Shown here one piece after another: positions 2,181 to 47,148 of a stretch of 64,000 nucleotides of DNA. Under the pieces are notes generated by a model. That model saw only the letters and a list, made by a program, of their open reading frames with translations. It searched no databases and was not told the DNA's origin. How positions within the stretch are numbered: position 1 is the stretch's first letter; the number at the start of each line of letters is the position of its first letter. The DNA is taken from positions 124,001-188,000 of the forward strand of contig NC_092355.1 in assembly GCF_963676685.1 (NCBI RefSeq), written 5' to 3'. The position numbers and the translations under genes were made by a program. This DNA comes from Mytilus edulis (Eukaryota).

Positions 2181-4150
2181 TTTTTATACGCCCGTCTTTT
2201 AGACGGGACGTATTATGGTATACCGTTGTCCGTCCGTCTGTCCGTCCGTCGTCCACACTTCGGACAATAACTCAAAAACACTTTCACCAATTTCCATGAA
2301 ACTTAAGTGAATTGTTTATATCTATTGACGTAAGCTCCCTTTCGTTTTTTTTTTTAATTTCAGATTTTAAGTTTTGGATTTATGGGGCTTTACTCATAAA
2401 AAAGAGGGGATTTTCAACGCTTCGGACAATAACTCAAAAAGGCTTTCACCAATGTCCATGAAACTTTGGTGAATTGTTTATATCTATTGATGTAAGCTCC
2501 CTTTCAATTTTTATAAATTTTAGATTTTAAGTTTTGGATTAATGGGGCTTTATTCATAAAAAAAAGGAAGTTTTGGATTTATGGGGCTTTACTCATAAAA
2601 AAGAGGGGATTTTCAACGCTTCGGACAATAACTCAAAAAGGCTTTCACCAATGTCCATGAAACTTTGGTGAATTGTTTATATCTATTGATGTAAGCTCCC
2701 TTTCAATTTTTATAAATTTTAGATTTTAAGTTTTGGATTAATGGGGCTTTATTCATAAAAAAAGGGGGATTTTTAACACTTCGGAAAATAACTCAAAAAG
2801 GCTTTCACCAATGTCCATGAAACTTTGGTGAATTGTTTATATCTATTGATGTAACAAATAATACTGAATAAAATCTGATGAAAACAAAAAAATTGTAAAA
2901 TCTTTAGTTCAATTTAAAACATTAAATTTCTTATAAAAAATAGGTTCCATTAATGTCATACGTTTGTACTATTATTGAATGGTTGCAAGGATGAAAGCAC
3001 ATTAACAGTCTCTGAGATACTAACTGTTCCCTGAGGCATATATCATTTTATGATAACATTTTTACTATCTAAGCTATGGATAAAAATCAAATACTGTTTT
3101 TGCATATAGGATGTTTTACTCTTGTTAAAATTGGTTGCAATTGAAATCACAAATGATACCTTAGCATTGCAGCTTTTTTATAGAGTTCGGTTTCGGTGGA
3201 AGGGTTGAGCACAATAAAAAATGTTATGAAACATAACTAGTCTACAATAGCACATAATAAGTGAACAAGTGACAACATGAAAATACTAACATGTGACTAA
3301 ATATTCCTTAAATGTCAAAGGGTGTCATTTTATGAAAAAAATAAGGAAATCAAGTCTCCTAAACATTTATCAATATGATCATCTTGTGAATATTCTAAAC
3401 AATAAAAAGGTAATAATCATTATCCACCATATTAAGCACCATTTGAACCACTTTTGCATACATCTTTGTATAATTTAGTATGGATTCCTTACTGTGATCA
3501 ACAGAATCCAACTATGAGCAATATACCCCAAGAAAATTATCTTCTTTCAAACTACTATAAAATTTGGAAATCAGCCATAGAATTACTAAAACCCATAATC
3601 ATATATCACTTTCCTTATATTGCATTGAAGACTTCTATGTTATATGCCAATGTTAATGGTATTTGTTTTTTATGCTAAATATTGAAAAGCTGAACTAGGT
3701 TTAATCATCAGTGTCTTCTTCACTGTAATCACTGTCCTCATCAGAAAAATCCTCATTTTCATTCTCAGAAGAGGCCTCCTCATCATCAATGAAATCTTTA
3801 TCTTCATCATCAATGGAATCCTTACTTTCATCACCTACTTCCTCATTTAGATCATAACTTTCAGTAGAGTCACTTTCACCATCTTCACTTTCCCTGTTAT
3901 CTTCTTGCTGCTCCTCATTGTCATTGTAGTCTTTTGCCATTTTTATACGCCCGTCGTCAATGAAATCCTTACTTTCATCACCTACTTCCTCATTTAGATC
4001 ATAACTTTCAGTAGAGTCACGTTCACCATCTTCACTTTCCCTGTTATCTTCTTGCTGCTCCTCATTGTCATTGTAGTCTTTTGCCATTTTTATACGCCCG
4101 TCGTCTTTCAAACAACGGGCGTATCATGCGCTAAAGCGCAGCCCTTTATT
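2181..4150 (+). mobile_element. Non-autonomous Helentron/HINE-like element with captured DNA, inserted in a T-run of a family B retrozyme
   Basis: 5' tttttatacgcccgtc..gacggg hairpin, (gtcc)n microsatellite, ~150-bp core repeats (2258-2853), 3' acgggcgtat subterminal inverted repeat and tgcgc-taaa-gcgca hairpin. The host repeat resumes (ggcacaactttt | ggaattttgagtcc). Paralog 25085-26559. Confidence 0.8.
3701..4111 (-). pseudogene. Captured fragment encoding an Asp/Glu-rich C-terminal tail, with an internal 147-bp duplication
   Basis: ORF is very D/E-rich and ends EEDTDD-stop. No native start: the 5' end abuts a HINE terminus. A single-copy version lies at 26252-26536. Confidence 0.5.
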
Positions 4151-4216: not shown

Positions 4217-4260
4217 GCGTCACTGATGAGTCTTATGAAGACGAAACGCGCGTCTGGCAT
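4217..4260 (+). ncRNA. Type I hammerhead ribozyme (family B retrozyme), intact core
   Basis: GCGUCA-CUGAUGA-GUCUU-aug-AAGAC-GAAA-CGCGCG-UC/UGGCAU: core boxes, helix II, palindromic helix III and GUC cleavage triplet. One mismatch in helix I. Confidence 0.85.
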
Positions 4261-6183: not shown

Positions 6184-9100
6184 TAATAAAATCAACGGTA
6201 CCAATTTTGTTGCACCAGATGCGCATTTCGACAATTCATGTCTCTTCAGTGATGCTCGTGGCCAAAATATTTGAAATCCAAAGCATATATAAAAGTTGAA
6301 GAGCTATAATCCAAAAGGTCCAAAAAGTATAACCAAATTCGTGAAAGGAATCAGAGCTTTGCATGAGGGAGATACATTCCTTAATTTATAATAATTTCTA
6401 ATATTTTGTAACAGCAAATTTTAATAACACAAAAAATCCGTATTTTCATGCCAGTACCGAGGTACTGGCTACTGGGCTGGTGATACCCTCAGGGACTAAT
6501 AGTCCACCAGCAGAGGCATCGACCCAGTGGTAGTAATAAAATCAACGGTACCAATTTTGTTGCACCAGATGCGCATTTCGACAATTCATGTCTCTTCAGT
6601 GATGCTCGTGGCCAAAATATTTGAAATCCAAAGCATATATAAAAGTTGAAGAGCTATAATCCAAAAGGTCCAAAAAGTATAACCAAATTCGTGAAAGGAA
6701 TCAGAGCTTTGCATGAGGGAGATACATTCCTTAATTTATAATAATTTCTAATATTTTGTAACAGCAAATTTTAATAACACAAAAAATCCGTATTTTCATG
6801 CCAGTACCGAGGTACTGGCTACTGGGCTGGTGATACCCTCGGGGACTAATAGTCCACCAGCAGAGGCATCGACCCAGTGGTAGTAATAAAATCAACGGTA
6901 CCAATTTTGTTGCACCAGATGCGCATTTCGACAATTCATGTCTCTTCAGTGATGCTCGTGGCCAAAATATTTGAAATCCAAAGCATATATAAAAGTTGAA
7001 GAGCTATAATCCAAAAGGTCCAAAAAGTATAACCAAATTCGTGAAAGGAATCAGAGCTTTGCATGAGGGAGATACATTCCTTAATTTATAATAATTTCTA
7101 ATATTTTGTAACAGCAAATTTTAATAACACAAAAAATCCGTATTTTCATGCCAGTACCGAGGTACTGGCTACTGGGCTGGTGATACCCTCGGGGACTAAT
7201 AGTCCACCAGCAGAGGCATCGACCCAGTGGTAGTAATAAAATCAACGGTACCAATTTTGTTGCACCAGATGCGCATTTCGACAATTCATGTCTCTTCAGT
7301 GATGCTCGTGGCCAAAATATTTGAAATCCAAAGCATATATAAAAGTTGAAGAGCTATAATCCAAAAGGTCCAAAAAGTATAACCAAATTCGTGAAAGGAA
7401 TCAGAGCTTTGCATGAGGGAGATACATTCCTTAATTTATAATAATTTCTAATATTTTGTAACAGCAAATTTTAATAACACAAAAAATCCGTATTTTCATG
7501 CCAGTACCGAGGTACTGGCTACTGGGCTGGTGATACCCTCGGGGACTAATAGTCCACCAGCAGAGGCATCGACCCAGTGGTAGTAATAAAATCAACGGTA
7601 CCAATTTTGTTGCACCAGATGCGCATTTCGACAATTCATGTATCTTCAGTGATGCTCGTGGCCAAAATATTTGAAATCCAAAGCATATATAAAAGTTGAA
7701 GAGCTATAATCCAAAAGGTCCAAAAAGTATAACCAAATTCGTGAAAGGAATCAGAGCTTTGCATGAGGGAGATACATTCCTTAATTTATAATAATTTCTA
7801 ATATTTTGTAACAGCAAATTTTAATAACACAAAAAATCCATATTTTCATGCCAGTACCGAGGTACTGGCTACTGGGCTGGTGATACCCTCGGGGACTAAT
7901 AGTCCACCAGCAGAGGCATCGACCCAGTGGTAGTAATAAAATCAACGGTACCAATTTTGTTGCACCAGATGCGCATTTCGACAATTCATGTCTCTTCAGT
8001 GATGCTCGTGGCCAAAATATTTGAAATCCAAAGCATATATAAAAGTTGAAGAGCTATAATCCAAAAGGTCCAAAAAGTATAACCAAATTCGTGAAAGGAA
8101 TCAGAGCTTTGCATGAGGGAGATACATTCCTTAATTTATAATAATTTCTAATATTTTGTAACAGCAAATTTTAATAACACAAAAAATCCGTATTTTCATG
8201 CCAGTACCGAGGTACTGGCTACTGGGCTGGTGATACCCTCGGGGACTAATAGTCCACCAGCAGAGGCATCGACCCAGTGGTAGTAATAAAATCAACGGTA
8301 CCAATTTTGTTGCACCAGATGCGCATTTCGACAATTCATGTCTCTTCAGTGATGCTCGTGGCCAAAATATTTGAAATCCAAAGCATATATAAAAGTTGAA
8401 GAGCTATAATCCAAAAGGTCCAAAAAGTATAACCAAATTCGTGAAAGGAATCAGAGCTTTGCATGAGGGAGATACATTCCTTAATTTATAATAATTTCTA
8501 ATATTTTGTAACAGCAAATTTTAATAACACAAAAAATCCGTATTTTCATGCCAGTACCGAGGTACTGGCTACTGGGCTGGTGATACCCTCGGGGACTAAT
8601 AGTCCACCAGCAGAGGCATCGACCCAGTGGTAGTAATAAAATCAACGGTACCAATTTTGTTGCACCAGATGCGCATTTCGACAATTCATGTCTCTTCAGT
8701 GATGCTCGTGGCCAAAATATTTGAAATCCAAAGCATATATAAAAGTTGAAGAGCTATAATCCAAAAGGTCCAAAAAGTATAACCAAATTCGTGAAAGGAA
8801 TCAGAGCTTTGCATGAGGGAGATACATTCCTTAATTTATAATAATTTGTAATATTTTGTAACAGCAAATTTTAATAACACAAAAAATCCGTATTTTCATG
8901 CCAGTACCGAGGTACTGGCTACTGGGCTGGTGATACCCTCGGGGACTAATAGTCCACCAGCAGAGGCATCGACCCAGTGGTAGTAATAAAATCAACGGTA
9001 CCAATTTTGTTGCACCAGATGCGCATTTCGACAATTCATGTCTCTTCAGTGATGCTCGTGGCCAAAATATTTGAAATCCAAAGCATATATAAAAGTTGAA

Positions 9101-12100
9101 GAGCTATAATCCAAAAGGTCCAAAAAGTATAACCAAATTCGTGAAAGGAATCAGAGCTTTGCATGAGGGAGATACATTCCTTAATTTATAATAATTTCTA
9201 ATATTTTGTAACAGCAAATTTTAATAACACAAAAAATCCGTATTTTCATGCCAGTACCGAGGTACTGGCTACTGGGCTGGTGATACCCTCGGGGACTAAT
9301 AGTCCACCAGCAGAGGCATCGACCCAGTGGTAGTAATAAAATCAACGGTACCAATTTTGTTGCACCAGATGCGCATTTCGACAATTCATGTCTCTTCAGT
9401 GATGCTCGTGGCCAAAATATTTGAAATCCAAAGCATATATAAAAGTTGAAGAGCTATAATCCAAAAGGTCCAAAAAGTATAACCAAATTCGTGAAAGGAA
9501 TCAGAGCTTTGCATGAGGGAGATACATTCCTTAATTTATAATAATTTCTAATATTTTGTAACAGCAAATTTTAATAACACAAAAAATCCGTATTTTCATG
9601 CCAGTACCGAGGTACTGGCTACTGGGCTGGTGATACCCTCGGGGACTAATAGTCCACCAGCAGAGGCATCGACCCAGTGGTAGTAATAAAATCAACGGTA
9701 CCAATTTTGTTGCACCAGATGCGCATTTCGACAATTCATGTCTCTTCAGTGATGCTCGTGGCCAAAATATTTGAAATCCAAAGCATATATAAAAGTTGAA
9801 GAGCTATAATCCAAAAGGTCCAAAAAGTATAACCAAATTCGTGAAAGGAATCAGAGCTTTGCATGAGGGAGATACATTCCTTAATTTATAATAATTTGTA
9901 ATATTTTGTAACAGCAAATTTTAATAACACAAAAAATCCGTATTTTCATGCCAGTACCGAGGTACTGGCTACTGGGCTGGTGATACCCTCGGGGACTAAT
10001 AGTCCACCAGCAGAGGCATCGACCCAGTGGTAGTAATAAAATCAACGGTACCAATTTTGTTGCACCAGATGCGCATTTCGACAATTCATGTCTCTTCAGT
10101 GATGCTCGTGGCCAAAATATTTGAAATCCAAAGCATATATAAAAGTTGAAGAGCTATAATCCAAAAGGTCCAAAAAGTATAACCAAATTCGTGAAAGGAA
10201 TCAGAGCTTTGCATGAGGGAGATACATTCCTTAATTTATAATAATTTCTAATATTTTGTAACAGCAAATTTTAATAACACAAAAAATCCGTATTTTCATG
10301 CCAGTACCGAGGTACTGGCTACTGGGCTGGTGATACCCTCGGGGACTAATAGTCCACCAGCAGAGGCATCGACCCAGTGGTAGTAATAAAATCAACGGTA
10401 CCAATTTTGTTGCACCAGATGCGCATTTCGACAATTCATGTCTCTTCAGTGATGCTCGTGGCCAAAATATTTGAAATCCAAAGCATATATAAAAGTTGAA
10501 GAGCTATAATCCAAAAGGTCCAAAAAGTATAACCAAATTCGTGAAAGGAATCAGAGCTTTGCATGAGGGAGATACATTCCTTAATTTATAATAATTTCTA
10601 ATATTTTGTAACAGCAAATTTTAATAACACAAAAAATCCGTATTTTCATGCCAGTACCGAGGTACTGGCTACTGGGCTGGTGATACCCTCGGGGACTAAT
10701 AGTCCACCAGCAGAGGCATCGACCCAGTGGTAGTAATAAAATCAACGGTACCAATTTTGTTGCACCAGATGCGCATTTCGACAATTCATGTCTCTTCAGT
10801 GATGCTCGTGGCCAAAATATTTGAAATCCAAAGCATATATAAAAGTTGAAGAGCTATAATCCAAAAGGTCCAAAAAGTATAACCAAATTCGTGAAAGGAA
10901 TCAGAGCTTTGCATGAGGGAGATACATTCCTTAATTTATAATAATTTGTAATATTTTGTAACAGCAAATTTTAATAACACAAAAAATCCGTATTTTCATG
11001 CCAGTACCGAGGTACTGGCTACTGGGCTGGTGATACCCTCGGGGACTAATAGTCCACCAGCAGAGGCATCGACCCAGTGGTAGTAATAAAATCAACGGTA
11101 CCAATTTTGTTGCACCAGATGCGCATTTCGACAATTCATGTCTCTTCAGTGATGCTCGTGGCCAAAATATTTGAAATCCAAAGCATATATAAAAGTTGAA
11201 GAGCTATAATCCAAAAGGTCCAAAAAGTATAACCAAATTCGTGAAAGGAATCAGAGCTTTGCATGAGGGAGATACATTCCTTAATTTATAATAATTTCTA
11301 ATATTTTGTAACAGCAAATTTTAATAACACAAAAAATCCGTATTTTCATGCCAGTACCGAGGTACTGGCTACTGGGCTGGTGATACCCTCGGGGACTAAT
11401 AGTCCACCAGCAGAGGCATCGACCCAGTGGTAGTAATAAAATCAACGGTACCAATTTTGTTGCACCAGATGCGCATTTCGACAATTCATGTCTCTTCAGT
11501 GATGCTCGTGGCCAAAATATTTGAAATCCAAAGCATATATAAAAGTTGAAGAGCTATAATCCAAAAGGTCCAAAAAGTATAACCAAATTCGTGAAAGGAA
11601 TCAGAGCTTTGCATGAGGGAGATACATTCCTTAATTTATAATAATTTCTAATATTTTGTAACAGCAAATTTTAATAACACAAAAAATCCGTATTTTCATG
11701 CCAGTACCGAGGTACTGGCTACTGGGCTGGTGATACCCTCGGGGACTAATAGTCCACCAGCAGAGGCATCGACCCAGTGGTAGTAATAAAATCAACGGTA
11801 CCAATTTTGTTGCACCAGATGCGCATTTCGACAATTCATGTCTCTTCAGTGATGCTCGTGGCCAAAATATTTGAAATCCAAAGCATATATAAAAGTTGAA
11901 GAGCTATAATCCAAAAGGTCCAAAAAGTATAACCAAATTCGTGAAAGGAATCAGAGCTTTGCATGAGGGAGATACATTCCTTAATTTATAATAATTTCTA
12001 ATATTTTGTAACAGCAAATTTTAATAACACAAAAAATCCGTATTTTCATGCCAGTACCGAGGTACTGGCTACTGGGCTGGTGATACCCTCGGGGACTAAT

Positions 12101-12896
12101 AGTCCACCAGCAGAGGCATCGACCCAGTGGTAGTAATAAAATCAACGGTACCAATTTTGTTGCACCAGATGCGCATTTCGACAATTCATGTCTCTTCAGT
12201 GATGCTCGTGGCCAAAATATTTGAAATCCAAAGCATATATAAAAGTTGAAGAGCTATAATCCAAAAGGTCCAAAAAGTATAACCAAATTCGTGAAAGGAA
12301 TCAGAGCTTTGCATGAGGGAGATACATTCCTTAATTTATAATAATTTCTAATATTTTGTAACAGCAAATTTTAATAACACAAAAAATCCGTATTTTCATG
12401 CCAGTACCGAGGTACTGGCTACTGGGCTGGTGATACCCTCGGGGACTAATAGTCCACCAGCAGAGGCATCGACCCAGTGGTAGTAATAAAATCAACGGTA
12501 CCAATTTTGTTGCACCAGATGCGCATTTCGACAATTCATGTCTCTTCAGTGATGCTCGTGGCCAAAATATTTGAAATCCAAAGCATATATAAAAGTTGAA
12601 GAGCTATAATCCAAAAGGTCCAAAAAGTATAACCAAATTCGTGAAAGGAATCAGAGCTTTGCATGAGGGAGATACATTCCTTAATTTATAATAATTTCTA
12701 ATATTTTGTAACAGCAAATTTTAATAACACAAAAAATCCGTATTTTCATGCCAGTACCGAGGTACTGGCTACTGGGCTGGTGATACCCTCGGGGACTAAT
12801 AGTCCACCAGCAGAGGCATCGACCCAGTGGTAGTAATAAAATCAACGGTACCAATTTTGTTGCACCAGATGCGCATTTCGACAATTCATGTCTCTT
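6184..12896 (-). mobile_element. Tandem array of 350-bp non-LTR retrozyme units (family A): 19 full units plus a 63-bp partial
   Basis: Exact 350-bp period with only 6 variant positions seen (6491, 7642, 7840, 8848, 9898, 10948). Each unit has a type I hammerhead on the minus strand. Confidence 0.93.
6212..6255 (-). ncRNA. Type I hammerhead ribozyme, first of 19 complete copies (repeats every 350 bp, last at 12512-12555)
   Basis: Minus strand reads GCAUCA-CUGAAGA-GACA-ugaau-UGUC-GAAA-UGCGCA-UC^UGGUGC: 6-bp helix I, CUGANGA, 4-bp helix II, GAAA, self-complementary helix III. Predicted cleavage between 6218 and 6217. Confidence 0.92.
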
Positions 12897-16959: not shown

Positions 16960-18873
16960 CTAATCAATTTCACACACCAGGACTTTAGTAGCATCACTAT
17001 CAAATGTTAGTAGAAATCTGTTACTGTTTGGTTTGAACCGTATTATCCATGGAGGAGCTGTGATGGTACTATCTATATCTGATATGGGAATGATTCGCAC
17101 GAGTTGTCCAGTAGAGGTCAACTGGTGAACGTTTATGGAATCATATCCAGTTGTATAAATGTTACCGTCGCTGTCAACTTCTTGGGAGAAGGGGCGTTGC
17201 AACAGACTGTGGTTGTACGAAAAGCCTTTTCCTTCATTACTTTCTCTTTTAATAGAATGTTCGCTATCCCAGTAGATGTAATCATTTTTTTGGTAGCAAC
17301 AAACATGTCTTGTGTCTGCTGTTGTTGGTTGACTTCTAACTACTGTACCATTGTCAGCGTTTAACCAAGATATTGTCTTGCCATTAGCAGTAACAAATTC
17401 GTTTTCACAGAACGAAATACCCCACACAGGATTCTTTATATCTAATGAGTTTAGTACAGTCAGCGGTTTAACGTTAATAACCACTATCTTCTTTTCATTT
17501 GAGGACACGGCAACTGTTTGATCATTCACTTTGGCTATATCTGTTACAATGTAAGGAATACATAACTGTTCTTGTTCTTGTCCTTTGTGGTCGTAGTATA
17601 CGATCTTATATTGTCTATAGTGGGTCAAAATAATATCATCATTAAAGAATATCCCACTAACGGCAGCTGTTGTAACATCAATTGTGAACACTATTTTGAT
17701 TTTCCCAGTATGGTAATTTGCTATCTTCACTCCAGGAATACATGACAGGTGTTCATCAAAAATCAAACTACCGAGAGAACTTATTTTTGAAATGATATCT
17801 CTCTGTTCAAACTTTACGGATATAACCCTTATTTCACGTAGAAGTTTAGAAATGTCATTTTCAGTTTGAGGAAGGTTTTTTAAAATCTCGTCCATCTTGA
17901 CCAGACATTGTATTTCTGACCCTTGAGATATACAAGCTTCGAATATATTCTTCCAGTAATCTACTGTATTTTTGATGCTAGATAAAGCTGCTGAATCATT
18001 ATCAAGCTTAATTACCTTTTCTTTCTTGCTACTGTTGGCTTTGTTCCTAAGTTTTTGCTCGAGTTCATTTAAATGTTTACACACTTTTTCACGCAAACTT
18101 ATGATTTCTATTAGAACTGTTTCTATGCCATTTTCAAAGGTTTTCTTGTTAGTCTTTTGGTTCTGAAGAACTTTACTTAATATGTTACTCGTTTCTGTTA
18201 ACTTTGTCATCAGGCTTTTGACTTTTTCGGATTCTTTTATCCCAGTTACCTCTCTATCAATAGTGACGACCTGTTCACATTTTCTGTGGTGGACAGTGGC
18301 GCAAACTGTACAACAAGGTTTGGAATGATCCTGACAGTAAACTTCTATCGTTTTGTCGGGATGTTCTTTACATGTGACATGTGCATGTAGACTGGAAGTT
18401 GAAATTTCTTCATTGATATCGGTGATTGGTATTATCTTATGACTCTTCGAAATTTTGAAAATTTTGTGGGCCTTTCTGCACGATTCACAATATGCTTCTT
18501 CGCAAACAGTACAGAAGAAAATAGCTTTCTGTTTGTCCTGTTCACAAGTATCACATAGCTTATCGGGTTTCTGTAATTCCTTTCTATCAATAAGTGATAT
18601 AATAAGATGGTTCACGGGTAAATTATTAGCCCACGTGTCAGGCTTCTTATCATCTATTGGCACAGACCGACGACATACGGGACATTTAAATCCACTTGGG
18701 TTATTGTCTTTCACGGTTGAAACAATATATGTATTAATACACGACTTACAAAACGTATGCAGACACGGCAGATACTTAGGTTCTTTGAAGATCTCCAAGC
18801 AGATTGTACAAGTCAGCAGACCATCAAAATCTTCTTTTAACTTTTCTCCTTTCACCTCCGCCGACATCGCCAT
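16960..18873 (-). CDS. TRIM E3 ubiquitin ligase (RING, 2 B-boxes, coiled coil, NHL-like beta-propeller), copy 1, 637 aa, intronless
   Basis: C3HC4 RING (CTIC..PCLHTFCKSC..CPVC), B-box1 (CDTC..CTVC..CESC..H), B-box2 (CKEH..CQDH..CTVC..HHRKC), helical middle, DSDGNIY propeller repeat. TRIM2/3/56/71-like architecture. Confidence 0.95.
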   Translation of the reverse strand: MAMSAEVKGEKLKEDFDGLLTCTICLEIFKEPKYLPCLHTFCKSCINTYIVSTVKDNNPSGFKCPVCRRSVPIDDKKPDTWANNLPVNHLIISLIDRKELQKPDKLCDTCEQDKQKAIFFCTVCEEAYCESCRKAHKIFKISKSHKIIPITDINEEISTSSLHAHVTCKEHPDKTIEVYCQDHSKPCCTVCATVHHRKCEQVVTIDREVTGIKESEKVKSLMTKLTETSNILSKVLQNQKTNKKTFENGIETVLIEIISLREKVCKHLNELEQKLRNKANSSKKEKVIKLDNDSAALSSIKNTVDYWKNIFEACISQGSEIQCLVKMDEILKNLPQTENDISKLLREIRVISVKFEQRDIISKISSLGSLIFDEHLSCIPGVKIANYHTGKIKIVFTIDVTTAAVSGIFFNDDIILTHYRQYKIVYYDHKGQEQEQLCIPYIVTDIAKVNDQTVAVSSNEKKIVVINVKPLTVLNSLDIKNPVWGISFCENEFVTANGKTISWLNADNGTVVRSQPTTADTRHVCCYQKNDYIYWDSEHSIKRESNEGKGFSYNHSLLQRPFSQEVDSDGNIYTTGYDSINVHQLTSTGQLVRIIPISDIDSTITAPPWIIRFKPNSNRFLLTFDSDATKVLVCEID

Positions 18874-28920: not shown

Positions 28921-30855
28921 CTAATCAATTTCACACACAAGCACTTTAGTAGCACCAGCATGAAAGGTTAGTAGAAATCTGTTACTGTTTGGCTGGAACC
29001 GTATTACCCATGGAGGAGCCGTGATGGAGTTGTCTAACTTCGATATGGGAATGATTCGTACCAGTTGTCCAGTAGATGTCAACTGGTGTATGTTTCTGGA
29101 ACTATATCCGGTGATATACACGTTTCCGTCGCTATCAACGTCCTGGAAATACGGGTTCTGTAACAGACTATTGCTATACGTAAAGCCTTTTCCTTCATTG
29201 CTCTCCTTTTTAATAGAATGTCCGCTATCCCAATAGATGTAATCATTTTTCGTGAAGCAATAAACATATCTTGTGTCTGTCGTTGTTTGTTTACTTCTAA
29301 CTAATGTACCATTACCAGCATTTAACCAAGATATTATTTTACTATGAGCAGTAACAAATTCGTTTTCACAGAATGAAATACCCCACACAGGATTGCTGAT
29401 ATTTAAAGTCTTCACGATAGTCAGCGGTTTAACGTTGATAACCACTATCTTCTTTTCATTTGAAGAAACAGCGACTGTTTGATCATTAAGTTTAGCTATG
29501 TCTGTTACATTGTAAGGAATACCTAGCTGTCCTTGTAGCTTCCCTTTGTTGTCGTAGTACACGATTTTTTTTTTTGTATGATGGGTCAAAATGATATCAT
29601 CATTAAAGAATATCCCACTTACGGCATTTATTGTTACATCAATTGTGAATGCTATTCGAATTTTTCCTGTATGGAAATTTGTTATCTTCATTCCAGGAAT
29701 AGAACATGCAGAAGGCCGATGCTCATCAAAAATCAAACTGCCGAGAGAACTAATTTCTGTAATGATATCTTTATGTTCAAACTTTACGGATATAGTCCTT
29801 ATTTCACGTAGAAGTTTATAAATGTCATTTTCAGTTTGAGGAAGATTATTTAGAATCTCGTTCATCTTGACCAGACATTGTATTTCTGATCCTTGAGACA
29901 TACAAGCTTCGAATAAACTCTTCCAGTTATCAACTATATTCTTTAGGCTGCCCACATCTGTTGTTTCGTCATCAAGCTTAATTAATTTTTCTTTCCTTCT
30001 ATTGTTGGCCTCGTCCCGAAGTTTTTGTTCGAGTTCATTCAAATGTGTACAAACTTTTTCTCGTAAAGTTGTGATTTCTTGAAGAAATGTTTCTATGCCA
30101 TTTTCAAAATTTTCCTTATTAGTCTTTTGGTTCTGAAGAACTTTACCTAATGTGTCACTCGTTTCTGTTAATGTTGTCAACAGGTTTTTTGCTTTTTCAG
30201 ATGCTTTTATCCCGGTCACCGCTCTATCGATAGTGACAACCTGTTCACATTTTCTGTGGTGGACAGTGGCACAAACTGTACAACAAGGTTTTAAATGATC
30301 CTGACAGTAAAATTCTATCGTCTTGTCGGGATGCCTTTTACAAGTGACATGCGCATATATACCGGAAACGGTGGTGTCTGTTATAATATCTGTGATGGGA
30401 ACTATTGTGTGCGTTCTTGTTGCTTTGTAAAGCTTATGACATCTTTGACATGATTCACAGTAAGCTTCTTCGCATACAGTGCAGAATGAGTGTGCCTTCT
30501 GAGAAATATTGTCTAGTATACAAGTATCGCAAAGTTTTTCCGACTTTTGGATTGCCTTTCTTTCAATTAATGATACGATAAAATGGTTCCCGTGTAAATT
30601 ATCTGCCCAAGTGTCAGACTTCTCATCATTGTCATGAATTGGCACAGGTCGACGACATACGGGACATTTGAATCCATTCGAATTGTTTCCTTTCACGGTT
30701 GAACCAATATATGTTTTTATACACGACTTACAAAACGTATGCAGACACGGCAGACACTTAGGTTCTTTGAATGTCTCCAAACAAATTGTACAAGTTAGTA
30801 GATCATCAAAATCTTCTGTCACCTTTTCTTCTTTCACCTTCGCCGACATCGCCAT
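28921..30855 (-). CDS. TRIM E3 ubiquitin ligase, copy 2, 644 aa, intronless
   Basis: Same RING/B-box/coiled coil/propeller motifs as copy 1. Open frame. Confidence 0.95.
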   Translation of the reverse strand: MAMSAKVKEEKVTEDFDDLLTCTICLETFKEPKCLPCLHTFCKSCIKTYIGSTVKGNNSNGFKCPVCRRPVPIHDNDEKSDTWADNLHGNHFIVSLIERKAIQKSEKLCDTCILDNISQKAHSFCTVCEEAYCESCQRCHKLYKATRTHTIVPITDIITDTTVSGIYAHVTCKRHPDKTIEFYCQDHLKPCCTVCATVHHRKCEQVVTIDRAVTGIKASEKAKNLLTTLTETSDTLGKVLQNQKTNKENFENGIETFLQEITTLREKVCTHLNELEQKLRDEANNRRKEKLIKLDDETTDVGSLKNIVDNWKSLFEACMSQGSEIQCLVKMNEILNNLPQTENDIYKLLREIRTISVKFEHKDIITEISSLGSLIFDEHRPSACSIPGMKITNFHTGKIRIAFTIDVTINAVSGIFFNDDIILTHHTKKKIVYYDNKGKLQGQLGIPYNVTDIAKLNDQTVAVSSNEKKIVVINVKPLTIVKTLNISNPVWGISFCENEFVTAHSKIISWLNAGNGTLVRSKQTTTDTRYVYCFTKNDYIYWDSGHSIKKESNEGKGFTYSNSLLQNPYFQDVDSDGNVYITGYSSRNIHQLTSTGQLVRIIPISKLDNSITAPPWVIRFQPNSNRFLLTFHAGATKVLVCEID

Positions 30856-31005: not shown

Positions 31006-31068
31006 TAATAAAATTAACGGTACCAATTTTCTTGCACCAGATGCGCATTTCGACAATACATGTCTCTT
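31006..31068 (-). mobile_element. 63-bp family A retrozyme fragment inserted ~150 bp upstream of TRIM copy 2
   Basis: taataaaattaacggtacc...tgtctctt. Absent at the paralogous site upstream of copy 3 (~51918). Confidence 0.85.
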
Positions 31069-31664
31069 CTTCTTCTTTAAATTACTATCAATATTCTACA
31101 TTATTTTATAATACTGATTTTAACTCAAAAATAAAGGTTGATGAAATTTGTTCTCATCTTATCACAGTAGAACATTGTCCTAAACGTTTGTTTTTTTAAT
31201 AGTTTGGATTAATTTATTTGCGTGGCTCAGGAAAACTAACATTTTCGTGGATATTTAATTTTGTAGTTTGTCAATTTCTGCAAACAAAAGCCTATAGAAA
31301 ATTTATAGTGCGTTGAACATTTCAATTCGTGGTTCACCTGTACCCACAAAACCAGCGAAAATTGGTGTCCAACGAATAATAATGAATCCACAGATGTTCC
31401 AACTCAATCGACATTTGTAGATTGACTAATTGATTGATCGATTGTATGTAACTACCGTCCAGTGACAATGGTTTTATGTAACTATCGTTCACTTACAATG
31501 GTTTTATGTAACTATCGTCCAGTGACAATGGTTTTTTTTATGTAACTTTACGTCCAGTGACAATGATTTTATGTAACTTTACGTCCAGTGACAATGTTTT
31601 ATATATCCCAATTGATACGATATTCCCATGCTTGCATTTCCTATTATGATTTTTTTGTTTTATA

Positions 31665-36725: not shown

Positions 36726-39700
36726 ATGGATCCCAGTCACGCGGAACCGCAAGAAGAGATACAGCCCCCAGAGGGAAATGTCCCAGATCTAGAACTACTA
36801 CAAAATCCGTCTAATACAACACTTTCAGATGAAAATGTCGAGACTAGGCGAGTGCGTGACCTCACAGAAAAAGGCAAAGGAGTTTTCACAGAAAAACGTG
36901 ACAAGTTCTGTCAGGAAATAGAGACCCTTTGGTCAGATGTAGAACCACAGTTATTGGAGATCACCACGCCTCCTAACGATCTCCAGCAACTCCTAACAGT
37001 CCAGGACAAACTTGTTAAAGCCTGTAATAATTATCGTAGGCTCACAGATGAATACCTAGACTTTCTGAAAAGGACCCGAACATTGGAGAGTCAAAAAGAA
37101 ATTGATGCATGTAAACTCTCTTTGGATTTACGTCTGTCCAAAGTGGAGCTAGTTATGGAAAAACTACACGAGCATCGCCTCGCTCTTACAAAGGCTAAAT
37201 CTACAAAAACAAAGACATCTAGAGGCAAGAAATCCTCACACAGTGGGAGCTCCCACGTCTCTGACATTTCAAGTCTTGCACGGAAGAAGCGTGCTAAAGC
37301 AGAGGCTGCCAGAACTCAGATAGCCTTTGCTGAAAAACAGGCCTTGCTCCTAAAGCAGGAGGCAATGATAGAAGAACAGACTCTTTTCAAGCAAAATGAA
37401 ATAAAGGCCGAGGCAGAACAAGAAGCCATCAGAGCAGAACAAGAAGCCATCAGAGCAGATCAAGAAGCCACAAGTAGAAATGCTGAGGCTGCACACCAGA
37501 GAGCTGAAATGAAACGCGAGGCCATACGCAGGAAAACTTTAATGGAACAGGAGGCTGCACGTGCAACACGGGAAAAGGCCGAAATTAAAGCTGCTATGAA
37601 CATTCTAGAAGCACAAAGAGAAGCTGCAGCCGCAGAAGCCGAGGCTCGTGTCCTAGAATACGACGGCAGCCAAGCATTTAGCGATCTTCCTGATGAAAAG
37701 GAAGACCCGCTCCGGCGTGTGCAAGATTTCGTCAATAAACTTCCTGTATCAACTGTTGAAAAGGAAGTAACAGGACCTCAAAAGAAAAAACAAATTCCTG
37801 TTAAGATCGAGCTGAGTCGCGAAGCACCAGCGTTCGTGCCATCCGTGGCACTGAACTTACTGTCACAGACATCTGCTGTCTTGCCTTCCGATACTAAGTC
37901 ACCGGAAGTTACCTCTATCCCAGATCTGGGATTAGTAACCGGCATACAAAAACTAGGCCTTTCAGATGAGATCCCTGCTGAACACCAAAAACAGGGTGTT
38001 AAAGAAGCAATCCCTGTCTTACGCACAAAACAAGACGTTATAGAAGAGATCCCTGTTTCACACCAAAAACAAGGCGTAATAGAAGAGATCCCTGTTGCAC
38101 ACCAGCAACAAATCAACCCAACATCGGAGATTACTAGATTTCTCTTGCGCAAGGACCTGCTTTTCTCCCGATTAACAAGCTTTAACGATCGGGCAGAATC
38201 CTTCCATACATGGAAAGCAAGCTTTAAAAACGTGACAGACGAGTTACAAGTATCTGACTCGGAACAGATTGATTTATTGATCAAGTGGCTCGGTCCTGAG
38301 TCTGCTAAACATGCCATAAGCATAAGAGCGTCGAACGCCAATAATCCTACAACAGGTATACAAAGATTATGGAAGAGGCTTGACGAGCGGTATGGTGCTC
38401 CAGAAATGTTGGAAGCCTCTCTCAGGAGTAAACTTGACAAATTCCCAACCTTGACGAATAAGGACAACGCACGTCTTTATGAACTGTCTGACATTCTATC
38501 AGAAATAGAATACCACAAGGAAAATCCCAAGCTGGGATGTCTGCTAGCTTATTTTGATTCACCGACCGGAATAAACCCTGTCATTGAAAAACTACCATAT
38601 GGACTTCAGGAAAAGTGGATTACAAGGGCGTCTAGATACAAATCTAATCACGGCGTTGCCTTTCCTCCTTTTACAGAGTTATCTGCATTCATCAGTGAAA
38701 TCAGTAGAATTAAAAACGATCCTGGATTAATCTTTGGGTCAAAAGTCACACCAAATACAAAAGGTGCTGCGCCAAGGTTCACGTCTTACCCCAAGACTAA
38801 AGTTGGTACTCATAAAACAGCGGTTGAGCAACAATCCGGAGACGCCAGCAAACAAGGTCTTTGTATTCTGCACAATACAAAGCATTCCTTAAATGAATGT
38901 CGAGCGTTCCGAGCCAAATCAATAGAGGAACGCAAAGGTCTTTTGAAAGAAAACAATGTCTGTTACAAGTGTTGTGATTCTACCAAACACAGAAGCCGGG
39001 AATGCAACGCACGCATAAGTTGTAAAGAATGTGGAAGTAAACAACACACTACCGCACTTCACATTACTAGACCACAGCAACCTTCAAGTTCTCAGTCTAG
39101 CTCGCCTAAGCAAGCCTACGGCGGGGAGCCTATAGAATCGGCTGAAACTAAGGCAACCTCAGTTAACTCTACCTGTACTGAGATCTGCAAAGATACATAT
39201 AGCGGGAAATCTTGTGCTAAAATACTGCCTGTGAATGTTTATCACAAAGATAACCAGGACAAAGTTATTCGCATGTACGCCATCATTGATGACCAAAGCA
39301 ACCGGTCACTAGCATCGCCCGAATTCTTTAATATTTTCGACGTCAAAGATAAACCGGAGAACTATACTTTATCAACATGCTCCGGCAAAGTAGTCACCTC
39401 CGGGAAAAGAGGAAGAGGTTTCATCATGGAATCAATCAACTGTAATGACAAGTTTGACCTTCCTGTACTGATTGAATGTGATCATATTCCAAATAATAGG
39501 GACGAAATTCCTACTCCGGAAGTCACAATGCATCACCCTCATCTAAAAGAACTCAGAGGAAGCATTCCACCATTAGACGAAAATTGCCAAATTCTTCTCC
39601 TAATTGGCAGAGACCTTATAGAGGCACACCACGTCCTTGACCAGCGCATAGGACCACCAAGAACTCCATATGCACAACAATTGAAACTTGGTTGGGTAGT

Positions 39701-40100
39701 GATAGGAGAAACCTGCATTAACAAGCAGCACGTACCCTTTGAATTAAATGTTAAAATAACCAACATTTTACCTACAGGACAACCTTCAACCTTTCAACCA
39801 TGCACAAGCAAGTTTGACATCCGGGAAAATTACACAGACCTTGTAACGAAAGATTTACAATCGCCACTCTTTGAAAAAACAAAGGACGATGATAAGCCTG
39901 GACAGTCATATGAGGACAAAATGTTCATGAAGCAGATGGACAACGAATTTGTGAGAGACTCGGAAGGAAGTTGGGTAGCACCGTTACCGTTCCGAGTGCC
40001 AAGACAGCCATTACCAAGCAACAGACCACAGGCTCTTCACCGTGCTAACATGTTAGACGCCAGTCTGAATAGAAGCGGGAACATTTTCTTACATTTATGA
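36726..40100 (+). CDS. gag: BEL/Pao Gag-protease part of the polyprotein
   Basis: Coiled coil, DUF1759-like region, three Cys/His knuckles (CILH..H...EC, CYKC..H...EC, CKEC...HTTALH), protease-like AIIDDQSNRS, LGWVVIG. Confidence 0.92.
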   Translation: MDPSHAEPQEEIQPPEGNVPDLELLQNPSNTTLSDENVETRRVRDLTEKGKGVFTEKRDKFCQEIETLWSDVEPQLLEITTPPNDLQQLLTVQDKLVKACNNYRRLTDEYLDFLKRTRTLESQKEIDACKLSLDLRLSKVELVMEKLHEHRLALTKAKSTKTKTSRGKKSSHSGSSHVSDISSLARKKRAKAEAARTQIAFAEKQALLLKQEAMIEEQTLFKQNEIKAEAEQEAIRAEQEAIRADQEATSRNAEAAHQRAEMKREAIRRKTLMEQEAARATREKAEIKAAMNILEAQREAAAAEAEARVLEYDGSQAFSDLPDEKEDPLRRVQDFVNKLPVSTVEKEVTGPQKKKQIPVKIELSREAPAFVPSVALNLLSQTSAVLPSDTKSPEVTSIPDLGLVTGIQKLGLSDEIPAEHQKQGVKEAIPVLRTKQDVIEEIPVSHQKQGVIEEIPVAHQQQINPTSEITRFLLRKDLLFSRLTSFNDRAESFHTWKASFKNVTDELQVSDSEQIDLLIKWLGPESAKHAISIRASNANNPTTGIQRLWKRLDERYGAPEMLEASLRSKLDKFPTLTNKDNARLYELSDILSEIEYHKENPKLGCLLAYFDSPTGINPVIEKLPYGLQEKWITRASRYKSNHGVAFPPFTELSAFISEISRIKNDPGLIFGSKVTPNTKGAAPRFTSYPKTKVGTHKTAVEQQSGDASKQGLCILHNTKHSLNECRAFRAKSIEERKGLLKENNVCYKCCDSTKHRSRECNARISCKECGSKQHTTALHITRPQQPSSSQSSSPKQAYGGEPIESAETKATSVNSTCTEICKDTYSGKSCAKILPVNVYHKDNQDKVIRMYAIIDDQSNRSLASPEFFNIFDVKDKPENYTLSTCSGKVVTSGKRGRGFIMESINCNDKFDLPVLIECDHIPNNRDEIPTPEVTMHHPHLKELRGSIPPLDENCQILLLIGRDLIEAHHVLDQRIGPPRTPYAQQLKLGWVVIGETCINKQHVPFELNVKITNILPTGQPSTFQPCTSKFDIRENYTDLVTKDLQSPLFEKTKDDDKPGQSYEDKMFMKQMDNEFVRDSEGSWVAPLPFRVPRQPLPSNRPQALHRANMLDASLNRSGNIFLHL

Positions 40101-43100: not shown

Positions 43101-43198
43101 GAAAAGCAGAAGTGCGAGTAATCGTTAATGAGAAAGCCACAACCTACACACGCCCTATCGTGGACATGATTCTTCTCGTAGAGAACAACTCTGTGTAA
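40097..43198 (+). CDS. pol: BEL/Pao RT-RNaseH-integrase part, separated from gag-PR by a frameshift near 40073
   Basis: RGVFDSSA, HVFGNSPSP, FYVDDGL (RT), VFSDASEKA and IPRLEL (RNase H), HHCC, GIDTFGP, SDRGTNF, GAWERMI (integrase). Confidence 0.95.
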   Translation: MSKILDNNHAELSPPLHEHEECWYLPLFGVYHPKKPDQIRGVFDSSAKCNGVSLNSVLLTGPDLTNDLLGVLLRFRKEMVAVTADVQHMFHCFVVRKDHRNYLRFLWQKDNDLQKNLVEYRMRVHVFGNSPSPAVATLGLRKAAQASEQEFGSHVTSFVTRDFYVDDGLTSCPTKEEAVKLMKDTQQALAKYGNLRLHKFASNCAEVMSAFHVSDLASNLKDLDLECDSKPLQRSLGLSWDVNTDNFLFQLSSENKPITRRGILSTINSLYDPLGFLAPVIIQGKLLLRKIVSETVDWDQPLSDETADEWKSWRDTLIAIETLRIPRTYVPYLSKTTTKELHVFSDASEKAIAAVAYLRTTDSSGEPNIAFILGKAKVAPTSGHTIPRLELSAAVLAVEITQTIMDNLDLHIDTVKFYTDSKVVLGYISNETRRFFIYVANRVEKIRKFSSPSQWNYVPTNRNPADSGTRSVPAHEIHSSEWLLGPRQLLFSEQKNSEDIYQLIDPEEDGEIRATVNVAKTFATLEQKGIGTDRFNRFSNWTSLVRAIALLERFSRLHGSKQTAPVTSLEGFSNAENFILISAQYEVYGDEIDCIKRQEQIHKRSPIANLNPFLDERGLLRVGGRIAKSDLNLREKKPLIVPGRHHIATLLVRYYHNKIKHQGRHFTDGAIRSAGFWIVGAKRSISSIIHKCVTCRKLRGKTEYQIMSDLPEDRLEPSPPFTNVGIDTFGPWTIVSRKTRGGYANSKRWAILFTCLVTRAIHIELIEEMSSSAFINAVRRFAAIRGQVKIFRSDRGTNFIGAIDDLKIDSINVEDGPFKNFLYNSGTTWIFNPPHSSHMGGAWERMIGITRRILDSMLLNAAGRSLTHDVLNTLMAEVSAIVNSRPLVPVSTDPENPLILTPAMLLTQKTDYIFTSDHLGEFDKRDLCLAEWRRVQALASVFWSRWRKEYLPLLQQRRKWTEDRRDLIEGDVILLKDKNICRTQWPVGIIVNSFKSSDEHVRKAEVRVIVNEKATTYTRPIVDMILLVENNSV

Positions 43199-46104: not shown

Positions 46105-47148
46105 TTTTTATACGCCCGTCAAAATTTTGACGGGACGTATTATGGTATACAAATGTCCGATGTCCGTCCGTCTGTCCGTCCGTCTGTCCGTCCGTCTGTC
46201 TGTCTGTCTGTCCGGCGTAAACATGTCGCACCGTAACTTGAGAACGACTTATCTAAATTTCATGAAACTTAATATAGTTGGTTTTGATGATGGTCAAATG
46301 ATCTGTATACATTTTGGTGAAAATAAGATTTAAACTTTTTGAGTTACGGCACTTTGTAACTAAAACAGGGGTGTGTTTTTTCACATGTCGCACCGTATCT
46401 CAAAAACGATTCTTGATTATTGCTTAAAACTTTACACACTTCTTAGTTATATTAATCTTAATATCTGTATACTTTTTGGTCATGATTCAAAATTTCATTT
46501 TTGAGTTATTGAGTATTTTGTAATAAAATTAACGGTATCAATTTTCTTGCACCAGATGCGCATTTCGACAATACATGTCTCTTCAGTGATGCTCGTGGCC
46601 AAAATATTTGAAATCCAAAGCTTATATAAAAGATGAAGAGCTATAATCCAAAAGCTCCAAAAAGTATAGCCAAATCATGTAAAAAAGGGGGAGGGTTTTT
46701 TACATGTCGCGCCGTATCTCAAAAACGATTTATGATTATTGCTTAAAACTTTACACACTTCTTTGTTATATTAATCTAAAGATCTCTATACTTTTTGGTG
46801 ATGGTTCAAAATTTCATTTTTGAGTTATTGAGTATTTTGTAAAAAAGGGGAGGGTTTTTTTTACATGTCGAGCCGTATATCAAAAACAATTTATGATTAT
46901 TGCTTGAAACTGTATACACTTCTTTGTTATATTAATCTAAAGATCTGTATACTTTTTGGTTTGATTCAAAATTTTATTTTAGTGATATTTGTAAAAAAAA
47001 AACATTTGGGTTTCACATGTCCCGCCGTGTCTTAAAAGCAATAAATGGTAATTGCTTAAAACTTTCTCAGAAACTATTTATGATTATTGCATAAAACTTC
47101 CACACAAGAAGTCGGGCGTATCATGCGCTCATGGCGCAGCTGTTTATT
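46105..47148 (+). mobile_element. HINE-like non-autonomous Helentron with ~160-bp core repeats
   Basis: tttttatacgcccgtc-aaaatttt-gacggg, (gtcc/gtct)n, core repeats, 3' cgggcgtat plus tgcgc-tcatg-gcgca hairpin. Confidence 0.8.
46521..46676 (-). mobile_element. Family A retrozyme fragment with a complete hammerhead (46549-46592), inserted in a HINE core repeat
   Basis: Matches the first ~155 bp of the 350-bp unit and begins at the same taataaaa terminus. Confidence 0.88.

What the first reader, a model, noticed from the sequence alone, without database searches (positions are those of the whole stretch)
6184..12896. The 350-bp 'satellite' is a 19-mer array of self-cleaving hammerhead ribozymes (retrozyme, predicted circRNA source)
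Seen: every unit reads, on the minus strand, GCAUCA-CUGAAGA-GACA(ugaau)UGUC-GAAA-UGCGCA-UC^UGGUGC, a complete type I hammerhead. Helix III is only the palindrome AUGCGCAU. Established: minimal type I hammerheads with palindromic helix III cleave as dimers in tandem repeats. Metazoan non-LTR retrozymes, including ~350-nt ones in Mytilus as I recall, are processed to monomers that circularise, so the class itself is known. Inference: a near-perfect 6.7-kb multimer fits a very recent rolling-circle reverse transcription of a 350-nt circular RNA by a Penelope-like RT supplied in trans. One minus-strand transcript would yield ~18 unit-length RNAs.
Basis: partly seen in the sequence, partly recalled or inferred. 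Interest (0 to 1): 0.9.

Follow-up and report, generated by a model that had tools for sequence, protein, structure and literature searches.

The report
Mussel hammerhead retrozyme tandem array
The 6.7-kb repeat is a real, very young 19-unit array of a mussel "retrozyme", a small non-coding mobile element in which every 350-base unit carries a self-cleaving hammerhead ribozyme; this kind of element and its circular RNAs were already published for Mytilus in 2020, so it is a good example rather than a discovery.

Summary
Observation confirmed. Window 6184-12896 holds 19 full 350-bp units, a 29-nt partial unit and a 34-nt end piece. The units differ at 6 of 6650 bases.

Each full unit has a type I hammerhead (HHR) on the minus strand. 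Eighteen are exact. One (7612-7655) has G10.1 changed to U. A 20th, at the 5' edge, is truncated. Rfam Hammerhead_1 gives 32.0 bits, just under its 34-bit cut-off, but all core bases are present and all three helices covary across the genome's HHR variants.

The kind is known. Cervera and de la Pena 2020 showed 350-390-bp HHR repeats and abundant circular RNAs in Mytilus galloprovincialis. Their primer matches 1,587 sites in this genome. This scan has also flagged retrozyme-like HHR repeats on other DNA of this genome (217 notes).

New detail:
- The HHR scaffold has about 6,500 copies. The array's exact variant has only 92, about 20 of them here.
- All 40 arrays examined end at the same unit position, 33-38 nt past the cut site, and their 5' ends are scattered. 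That is a target-primed reverse-transcription signature.
- A private G-to-C change recurs every third unit, so part of the 19 copies arose by DNA-level duplication, not by one rolling-circle event.

No read data could be obtained, and no Penelope-like partner was identified.

The parts
6184..12896 (-). Retrozyme array: a 29-nt partial unit (unit positions 322-350), 19 full 350-bp units and a 34-nt terminal piece (unit positions 1-34). Units are numbered from the predicted cut site.
6212..6255 (-). Type I hammerhead of the 3'-most unit. Identical motifs recur every 350 bp up to 12512-12555 (19 in all). The cut is predicted between 6218 and 6217 (+350k).
7612..7655 (-). The one hammerhead copy with a core-adjacent defect: G10.1 to U (window 7642), which breaks the G10.1-C11.1 pair at the base of helix II.
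12512..12555 (-). The 5'-most complete hammerhead of the array.
12862..12896 (-). Truncated 20th hammerhead at the array's 5' edge. It starts at A6 of CUGAAGA, so it lacks the helix I 5' strand and C3-G5 and is not expected to cut on its own.
6184..6217 (-). 34-nt terminal piece after the last cut site, ending in ...GATTTTATTA. All 40 arrays examined genome-wide end at this unit position.
6450..6533 (-). G+C-rich structured domain (unit positions 35-118, 58% GC, two hairpins; repeated in every unit). It is the only long stretch shared with the published Mg353 retrozyme family. It starts directly after the insertion end point.
8848..8848 (-). G170C, a substitution private to this array. It is also at 9898 and 10948, so it recurs every third unit (1050 bp).
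46520..46675 (-). Separate 5'-truncated solo insertion of the same family (unit positions 230-350 plus 1-35, loop 2 UGUAU). It has the same 3' end and sits inside an unrelated 161-bp repeat.
31006..31069 (-). Separate 64-bp insertion of the same family (unit positions 321-350 plus 1-34) with the same 3' end.

Best explanation
The array is a genomic copy of a Mytilus non-LTR retrozyme, a non-coding, non-autonomous retroelement whose 350-nt unit carries one type I hammerhead. The proposed cycle has four steps.

1. Cleavage (inferred from sequence, folding and covariation; published for a sister family). A minus-strand transcript is cut after C17 in each unit. Adjacent copies most likely pair their AUGCGCAU palindromes into one 8-bp helix III. 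This gives about 16-18 monomers of 350 nt.

2. Circularisation (published for the genus; not tested on this family). Host ligase closes the monomers into circles.

3. Re-insertion (inferred from insertion anatomy). A reverse transcriptase supplied in trans starts cDNA synthesis at a fixed site, ...UUUAUU(A), directly 5' of a conserved structured domain. It copies the same monomer sequence repeatedly and stops at a variable point. The result is internally uniform arrays with one fixed 3' end and variable 5' truncation.

4. Growth at the DNA level (inferred from variant spacing). This particular array, from a very young subfamily, grew further by at least two 3-unit (1050-bp) duplications.
For: - The array and its motifs are real, and the catalytic core is complete. 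Rfam gives 32 bits, E 7.7e-5.
- Six hammerhead variants from this genome keep 92.9% of cells paired, against 45% or less when partners are slid. Changes on both sides occur in helices I, II and III.
- Two isolated 44-nt cores fold as a double hammerhead at -27.3 kcal/mol, against 2 x -7.8 for monomers. The canonical monomer fold is only -3.7.
- In a transcript spanning two adjacent copies, both the minimum-energy and the centroid structures form the 8-bp inter-copy helix III.
- The family is dispersed over all 14 large contigs. The hammerhead scaffold has 6,484 copies, against 0 for the control pattern.
- All 40 arrays examined end at unit position 33-38 (mode 34), with 5' ends from position 4 to 329 and unrelated flanks.
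- Units differ by 0.62 of 350 bases within arrays and 6.1 of 350 between arrays.
- Variable sites are 2-2.5 times rarer in the end piece, the domain and the hammerhead than in the A+T-rich middle.
- The unit is 38% G+C with no long ORF.
- PMC7229834 reports 350-390-bp HHR repeats, self-cleavage and abundant circRNA in M. galloprovincialis. Its primer 110D matches 1,587 sites here.
- Penelope-like elements (PLEs) with RT plus GIY-YIG are present.
- G170C sits in units 7, 10 and 13 only and is absent from the other 38 arrays with a full-length unit.
Against: - No RNA or read evidence could be obtained here, so transcription of this locus, cleavage of this hammerhead variant and circles of this family are not shown.
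- The Rfam score is below the gathering cut-off.
- No target-site duplication flanks this array, and across loci exact repeats of 6 bp or more at the junctions are only modestly enriched (27% against 10% in mismatched controls).
- No empty paralogous site exists.
- No autonomous element sharing the end sequence or the hammerhead in sense orientation was found in 30 PLE loci.
- A homogeneous parent array transcribed as a linear multimer would give the same uniform daughter arrays as a circle would.
- The 40 arrays are not a random sample: they are the best-scoring, near-full-length matches to this unit.
Confidence: 0.8

Rival explanations
1. Most of the 19 units come from DNA-level satellite dynamics. 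A short retro-insertion of a few units, as at the other loci of this subfamily, was expanded by unequal exchange or replication slippage, and no long rolling-circle cDNA was involved.
For: The private G170C change recurs at exactly 3-unit spacing (units 7, 10, 13). The chance of that spacing for 3 random units of 19 is 1.3%. All of the roughly 55 other loci of the exact subfamily have 5 hammerheads or fewer in a row. The longest other array sampled has 9 units.
Against: Only 6 of the 19 units need to be explained by the two block duplications. Arrays of up to 62 units are reported for coral retrozymes. The remaining units show no higher-order pattern.
Confidence: 0.35
2. The template for insertion was a linear, unprocessed multimeric transcript of a parent array, or linear monomers joined by template jumping, rather than a circular monomer.
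For: Uniform daughter arrays also follow from a uniform parent. Linear retrozyme RNAs exist in mussels, at up to 10-25% of the signal.
Against: Unit junctions are exact, with a strict 350-bp period and no added bases. In mussels most of the RNA is circular. Efficient self-cleavage would leave few long multimers.
Confidence: 0.2
3. The copy number or the near-identity of the units is an assembly artefact of a collapsed or over-expanded tandem repeat.
For: Long, near-identical tandem repeats are hard to assemble, and no reads could be laid on the array.
Against: The array sits between unique flanks in a chromosome-scale contig. It carries four distinct internal variants at defined units, which is not what a simple collapse or padding produces.
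Confidence: 0.07
4. It is an ordinary satellite whose hammerhead-like motif is not functional.
For: The Rfam score is below the gathering cut-off. The monomeric canonical fold is weak, at -3.7 kcal/mol.
Against: The core is complete, the helices covary, the hammerhead evolves more slowly than the rest of the unit, and the element is dispersed with retro-insertion anatomy. A sister family from the same genus self-cleaves and circularises.
Confidence: 0.03

Closest known systems
Mytilus galloprovincialis non-LTR retrozymes (Cervera and de la Pena 2020, PMC7229834; cloned genomic copy Mg353)
   Same: Same host genus: their primer 110D has 1,587 exact sites in this genome. Same architecture: tandem 350-390-bp, A+T-rich, non-coding repeats with one type I hammerhead per unit. 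The hammerhead layout is the same length (helix II 4 bp with a 5-nt loop; 8-nt palindromic helix III). The G+C-rich structured domain is shared (CCACTGGGTCGATGCC...CCAGCCCAGTAG). Both end at the homologous ...TTTATT just before that domain.
   Different: The rest of the unit is not alignable. The hammerhead differs at N7, in both strands of helix II, in loop 2, in helix III (AUGCGCAU against ACGCGCGU) and in helix I. The distance from cut site to insertion end is 34 nt here and about 52 nt in the Mg353 type. Cleavage and circles were shown for the Mg353 type, not for this family.
Newt and salamander satellite 2 hammerheads (double-hammerhead cleavage; Forster et al. 1988, as cited in PMC7761336)
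   Same: About 330-350-bp tandem units, a type I hammerhead with a helix III too short to be stable in one molecule, and predicted action through pairing of two copies.
   Different: Different phylum and unrelated sequence. Helix III here is a full 8-nt palindrome. Activity was not tested for this variant.
Penelope-like elements (PLEs) and their non-autonomous derivatives
   Same: Frequent 5' truncation, head-to-tail multicopy insertions, hammerheads in terminal repeats, weak or variable target-site duplications, and coexistence in the same genome.
   Different: No ORF. The hammerhead is a canonical three-helix type rather than the minimal PLE type seen at L065, L066 and L070. No sequence link to a specific PLE was found here.
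Plant LTR retrozymes
   Same: Non-autonomous retroelements processed by hammerheads into circular RNAs (abstracts).
   Different: The plant elements have type III hammerheads inside LTRs, PBS and PPT motifs, 600-1000-nt circles, more than 55% GC and Gypsy-type mobilisation. None of these features is present here.

Membership tests
Metazoan non-LTR retrozyme | A type I hammerhead with an intact catalytic core in every tandem unit | tested here: met
   19 of 19 full units carry the motif and 18 are exact. One has G10.1U, outside the 11 core bases but at a conserved pair.
Metazoan non-LTR retrozyme | Short tandem repeats of about 150-450 bp, low GC (below 45-50%), no LTR/PBS/PPT and no coding capacity | tested here: met
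   Period 350 and GC 38%. The longest open frame over a multimer is 90 codons. No terminal repeats other than the units themselves.
Metazoan non-LTR retrozyme | Dispersed at many genomic loci as monomers to multimers, showing mobility | tested here: met
   Arrays of 1-9 full units with unrelated flanks lie on contigs C1-C14, and the window holds two more insertions. The scaffold has 6,484 copies.
Metazoan non-LTR retrozyme | Target-site duplications, when present, longer than 4 bp | tested here: inconclusive
   None at this array. Across 40 loci, junction repeats of 6 bp or more occur in 27% against 10% in controls. Four are 7-9 bp by the junction scan; the L038 repeat reads 10 bp in the earlier longest-common-substring pass. 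No empty site was available.
Metazoan non-LTR retrozyme | Expressed and processed to monomeric linear and circular RNA | not testable with these tools
This is published for the related Mg353-type family in the genus.
Metazoan non-LTR retrozyme | Coexistence with autonomous Penelope-like elements | tested here: met
   At least 858 GIY-YIG candidates with open frames up to 1,053 codons. The L086 ORF has RVT_1 followed by GIY-YIG.
Rfam RF00163 Hammerhead_1 | Covariance-model score at or above the curated gathering score (34 bits) | tested here: not met
   32.0 bits, E 7.7e-5 in 10 kb, and absent from the gathering-threshold scan. The shortfall is 2 bits and comes from non-consensus helix sequences, not from core mismatches.
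Hammerhead ribozyme (structural definition) | Core CUGANGA / GAAA / UH cut site with three helices supported by covariation | tested here: met
   All core bases are present. Of 14 pairs, 5 show changes on both sides. 92.9% of cells are paired against 45% or less for slid controls, and 0 of 500 shuffles reach the observed covariation score.
Hammerhead ribozyme (structural definition) | Site-specific self-cleavage | not testable with these tools
   Needs in vitro transcription of a monomer and a dimer.

The most novel reading that the evidence does not exclude
Mussel retrozymes have a defined cDNA initiation site. In this family (40 of 40 arrays examined, plus the two other insertions in this window), insertions end at ...TTTATT(A), immediately 5' of a conserved, covarying two-hairpin domain; a copy of the divergent Mg353-type family read in L100 ends at the homologous position, and nine more end within a few bases of it by BLAST. 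The distance to the hammerhead cut differs between the two families (34 against about 52 nt). If so, that domain is the reverse-transcriptase recognition element that a 2020 review said was not apparent for animal retrozymes. It would give a handle for identifying the autonomous partner and for testing rolling-circle target-primed reverse transcription. In addition, this 19-mer may be the currently active source locus of a newly arisen subfamily (92 hammerhead copies, about a fifth of them here).
Probability: 0.45. Interest if true: 0.55.

Novelty: new member of a known kind. Interest (0 to 1): 0.3.

Why it matters
The class, its self-cleavage and its circular RNAs are already established in Mytilus, so the array itself adds a clean, very young example and a second, more abundant sequence family beside the cloned one.

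What could matter is the insertion anatomy that this family exposes:
- a fixed 3' end next to a conserved structured domain;
- scattered 5' truncation;
- arrays that are uniform inside but differ between loci.

That is direct sequence evidence for how these elements are reverse-transcribed and inserted, a step that the literature still treats as a hypothesis. The period-3 variant also shows that copy number in such arrays cannot be read simply as the length of one rolling-circle cDNA.

Tried and rejected
Expression, RNA ends at the cut site and long-read copy number remain untested.
- Empty-site search. Both flanks adjacent to the array are unique in the genome. Only a repeat 190 nt away and weak 75-83% matches turned up, so no paralogous pre-insertion site exists.
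- Target-site duplication at this array. The flanks show a 22-nt resemblance with 4 mismatches. It includes a 9-nt match (AGAGACATG) between the downstream flank and the element's 5' start. That is too imperfect for so young an insertion and is better read as microhomology or chance.
- Autonomous partner. I scanned 30 GIY-YIG loci by BLAST, by motif and with Rfam. They yielded PLE-type minimal hammerheads (L065, L066, L070), Mg353-type copies (L073, L094), one CCGG-variant copy antisense to a decayed endonuclease fragment (L093) and one degenerate sense copy (L081). No convincing partner emerged.
- Pairs of hammerheads 2.7-6.2 kb apart turned out to be duplicated or inverted truncated insertions. 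One pair flanks a Gypsy-type integrase/SCAN ORF, not a PLE.
- Pol III or tRNA origin. ARAGORN finds no tRNA. A B-box-like GGGTCGATGCC exists, but the unit has several internal T-runs and the Mg353-type end has only TTT, so I dropped the idea (reasoning on the sequences).
- Rfam gives no family for the conserved domain.
I corrected it to 30 places.
Full report
**1. The observation**

Tandem Repeats Finder reports one array at 6184-12896 with period 350, 19.2 copies and 99% matches. Shuffled sequence gives none.

Eighteen copies are exact. The copy at 7612-7655 has G to T at motif position 14. That base is G10.1, which pairs with C11.1 at the base of helix II. At the array's 5' edge on the minus strand a 20th copy begins at A6 of CUGAAGA and is therefore incomplete.

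Numbered from the predicted cut (C17 at 6218+350k, next base at 6217+350k), the array is 29 nt (unit positions 322-350), then 19 full units, then 34 nt.

The 19 full units differ from their consensus at only 6 of 6650 positions:
- C77T in unit 0;
- C128T and G326T in unit 4;
- G170C in units 7, 10 and 13.

**2. Whether it is a hammerhead**

Every core position is present: CUGANGA, GAAA, the A15.1-U16.1 pair and C17. Helix I has 6 bp, helix II has 4 bp with a 5-nt loop, and helix III is the palindrome AUGCGCAU.

Rfam Hammerhead_1 aligns end to end at 32.0 bits (E 7.7e-5 in a 10-kb search). That is 2 bits under the curated cut-off of 34, so a gathering-threshold scan reports none of them. The same scan does report a different hammerhead at 4217-4260 on the plus strand (35 bits).

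I aligned six hammerhead variants from this genome. On the three-helix model 92.9% of cells are paired, against 45% or less when partners are slid. Five of 14 pairs change on both sides, and no shuffle out of 500 reaches the observed covariation score.

One of the covarying pairs is the inner helix III pair (GCGC to CCGG). It cannot form inside a single 8-nt hairpin, which argues that the palindrome pairs between two copies.

Folding agrees:
- The canonical monomer fold is worth only -3.7 kcal/mol.
- Two cores together fold as a double hammerhead at -27.3 kcal/mol, against 2 x -7.8 for separate monomers.
- In a transcript spanning two adjacent copies, both the minimum-energy and the centroid structures contain the 8-bp inter-copy helix III.

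**3. What it is**

The unit is 38% G+C and has no long ORF. The genome is 1.37 Gb with 14 large contigs, and the window lies on contig C12.

Cervera and de la Pena (2020, PMC7229834) described non-LTR retrozymes in three animals, including Mytilus galloprovincialis. For the mussel they report about 5,000 type I hammerheads in 350-390-bp tandem repeats. A cloned monomer self-cleaved at about 0.1 per min, and circular RNAs were abundant in gonad and mantle. Mobilisation by Penelope-like elements was a hypothesis.

Their degenerate primer 110D matches 1,587 sites in this genome and 0 in the control. Their primer 109R is present exactly in locus L094. The genome is therefore a Mytilus or a very close relative.

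Their cloned copy, Mg353, carries the hammerhead type seen at 4217-4260, not the array's type. The array unit shares only the G+C-rich domain with Mg353 (unit positions about 40-100). So the array belongs to a sister family of the published one.

That sister family is the more abundant of the two. Its hammerhead scaffold has 6,484 copies. The array's exact variant, with loop 2 UGAAU, has only 92 copies at about 55 loci. About 20 of those copies lie in this array, and no other locus has more than 5 in a row.

Five other loci differ from the array consensus by 0-1 base, so this subfamily is very young.

**4. How it spreads**

I fetched 39 other arrays, chosen as the best matches to the unit, and added the one in the window.

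- All 40 end at unit position 33-38, with a mode of 34 (...GATTTTATTA).
- Their 5' ends are scattered from position 4 to 329.
- Their flanks are unrelated, apart from one duplicated pair, L019 and L050.
- The two other insertions in the window (46520-46675 and 31006-31069) end at the same place.

A fixed 3' end with variable 5' truncation is the signature of target-primed reverse transcription. It is not what unequal exchange or re-integration of circular DNA would leave.

Units differ by 0.62 of 350 bases within arrays and by 6.1 of 350 between arrays. Each array therefore looks like repeated copying of one monomer sequence. That fits a circular template, although a uniform linear multimer would look the same.

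Variable sites are 2-2.5 times rarer in the end piece, the structured domain and the hammerhead than in the A+T-rich middle.

In the Mg353-type family a copy read in L100 ends at the homologous ...TTTATT, directly before the same conserved domain, and nine other copies end within a few bases of it by BLAST. There the end is about 52 nt from the cut, not 34. The fixed point is therefore tied to the domain, not to the ribozyme.

The domain's second hairpin shows two compensatory changes between the families (my reading of the sequences printed).

A 2020 review (PMC7761336) states that animal retrozymes show no conserved motif that would point to their autonomous partner. This anatomy may fill that gap, but I could not name the partner.

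Canonical PLEs with RT followed by GIY-YIG are present and some look intact. None of 30 sampled loci shares this element's end or carries its hammerhead in sense orientation.

Target-site duplications are weak. Junction repeats of 6 bp or more occur at 27% of loci against 10% in mismatched controls, and there is none at this array. No empty site exists.

**5. Whether one rolling-circle event made the 19-mer**

G170C is absent from the other 38 arrays with a full-length unit, which carry G or A at that position. Within this array it sits in units 7, 10 and 13 only. The chance of exactly this spacing for three random units of 19 is 1.3%, and 8% for any equal spacing.

Rolling-circle copying of a trimeric circle would have placed the change in every third unit along the whole array, and it does not. 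The simplest reading is two successive 1050-bp block duplications at the DNA level.

At least 6 of the 19 units would then post-date the insertion, and the original insertion had 13 units or fewer. An assembly error cannot be excluded without reads.

**6. Limits**

Transcription of this locus, cleavage by this variant, circles of this family and the true copy number all remain untested here.

**7. Verdict**

The main reading, a hammerhead retrozyme array and a likely circular-RNA source, is correct and was already published for this genus.

This scan had also flagged retrozyme-like hammerhead repeats on other DNA of the same genome: 217 notes hold the words 'hammerhead retrozyme'.

The array is a new, very young member of a known kind. 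The added value lies in the genome-wide insertion anatomy and in the evidence for DNA-level growth of this array.

Noticed in passing
window 4217-4260 (+): A solo hammerhead of the published Mg353 type is the only Rfam hit above the gathering score (35 bits). It sits in a partial copy of that retrozyme family, next to a 147-bp tandem duplication at 3810-4105.
   Followed up: partly
window 6450-6533 (-) and every unit; L100, L101: A two-hairpin G+C-rich domain is shared by the array family and the Mg353-type family, with compensatory changes in both hairpins. In the array family, and in the Mg353-type copy read in L100, insertions end at ...TTTATT, directly 5' of this domain. Many Mg353-type solo copies are about 290 bp, lack the domain and have consistent ends on both sides.
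   Followed up: partly
G000 contig C1, e.g. 4529573-4530719: A hammerhead subfamily has helix III AUCCGGAU, again a perfect palindrome and a double compensatory change from AUGCGCAU. It has loop 2 UUUAU and a repeat period of about 550-570 bp. One copy with AUCUAGAU was also seen.
   Followed up: no
L097 (G000 C12:19136300-19144600): Two identical, inverted, 5'-truncated copies of the array's subfamily (unit 217-350 plus 34 nt) lie 6.2 kb apart. They flank a 941-codon ORF with SCAN, integrase zinc-binding and rve domains, plus an RT fragment. This may be an inverted duplication or a composite element.
   Followed up: partly
window 16960-18873 (-), 28921-30855 (-), 54619-56541 (-): Three paralogous intronless ORFs of about 640 aa with RING and B-box domains (TRIM-like) make up a local gene cluster.
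   Followed up: no
window 36726-43198 (+): Two long adjacent ORFs (1,124 and 1,033 aa) carry Pao/BEL peptidase A17, an RT and DUF5641 domains. This looks like an intact BEL/Pao LTR retrotransposon.
   Followed up: no
unit position 326 (window 7642; also one unit of L047): The same G10.1 to T change arose independently in one unit of two different arrays.
   Followed up: no
5' ends of insertions: window 12896 and 31069; L014, L042: Four independent insertions begin within 6 nt of each other (unit positions 317-322, inside CUGAAGAG). This may be a preferred stop or joining point for the cDNA just past the helix II hairpin.
   Followed up: no
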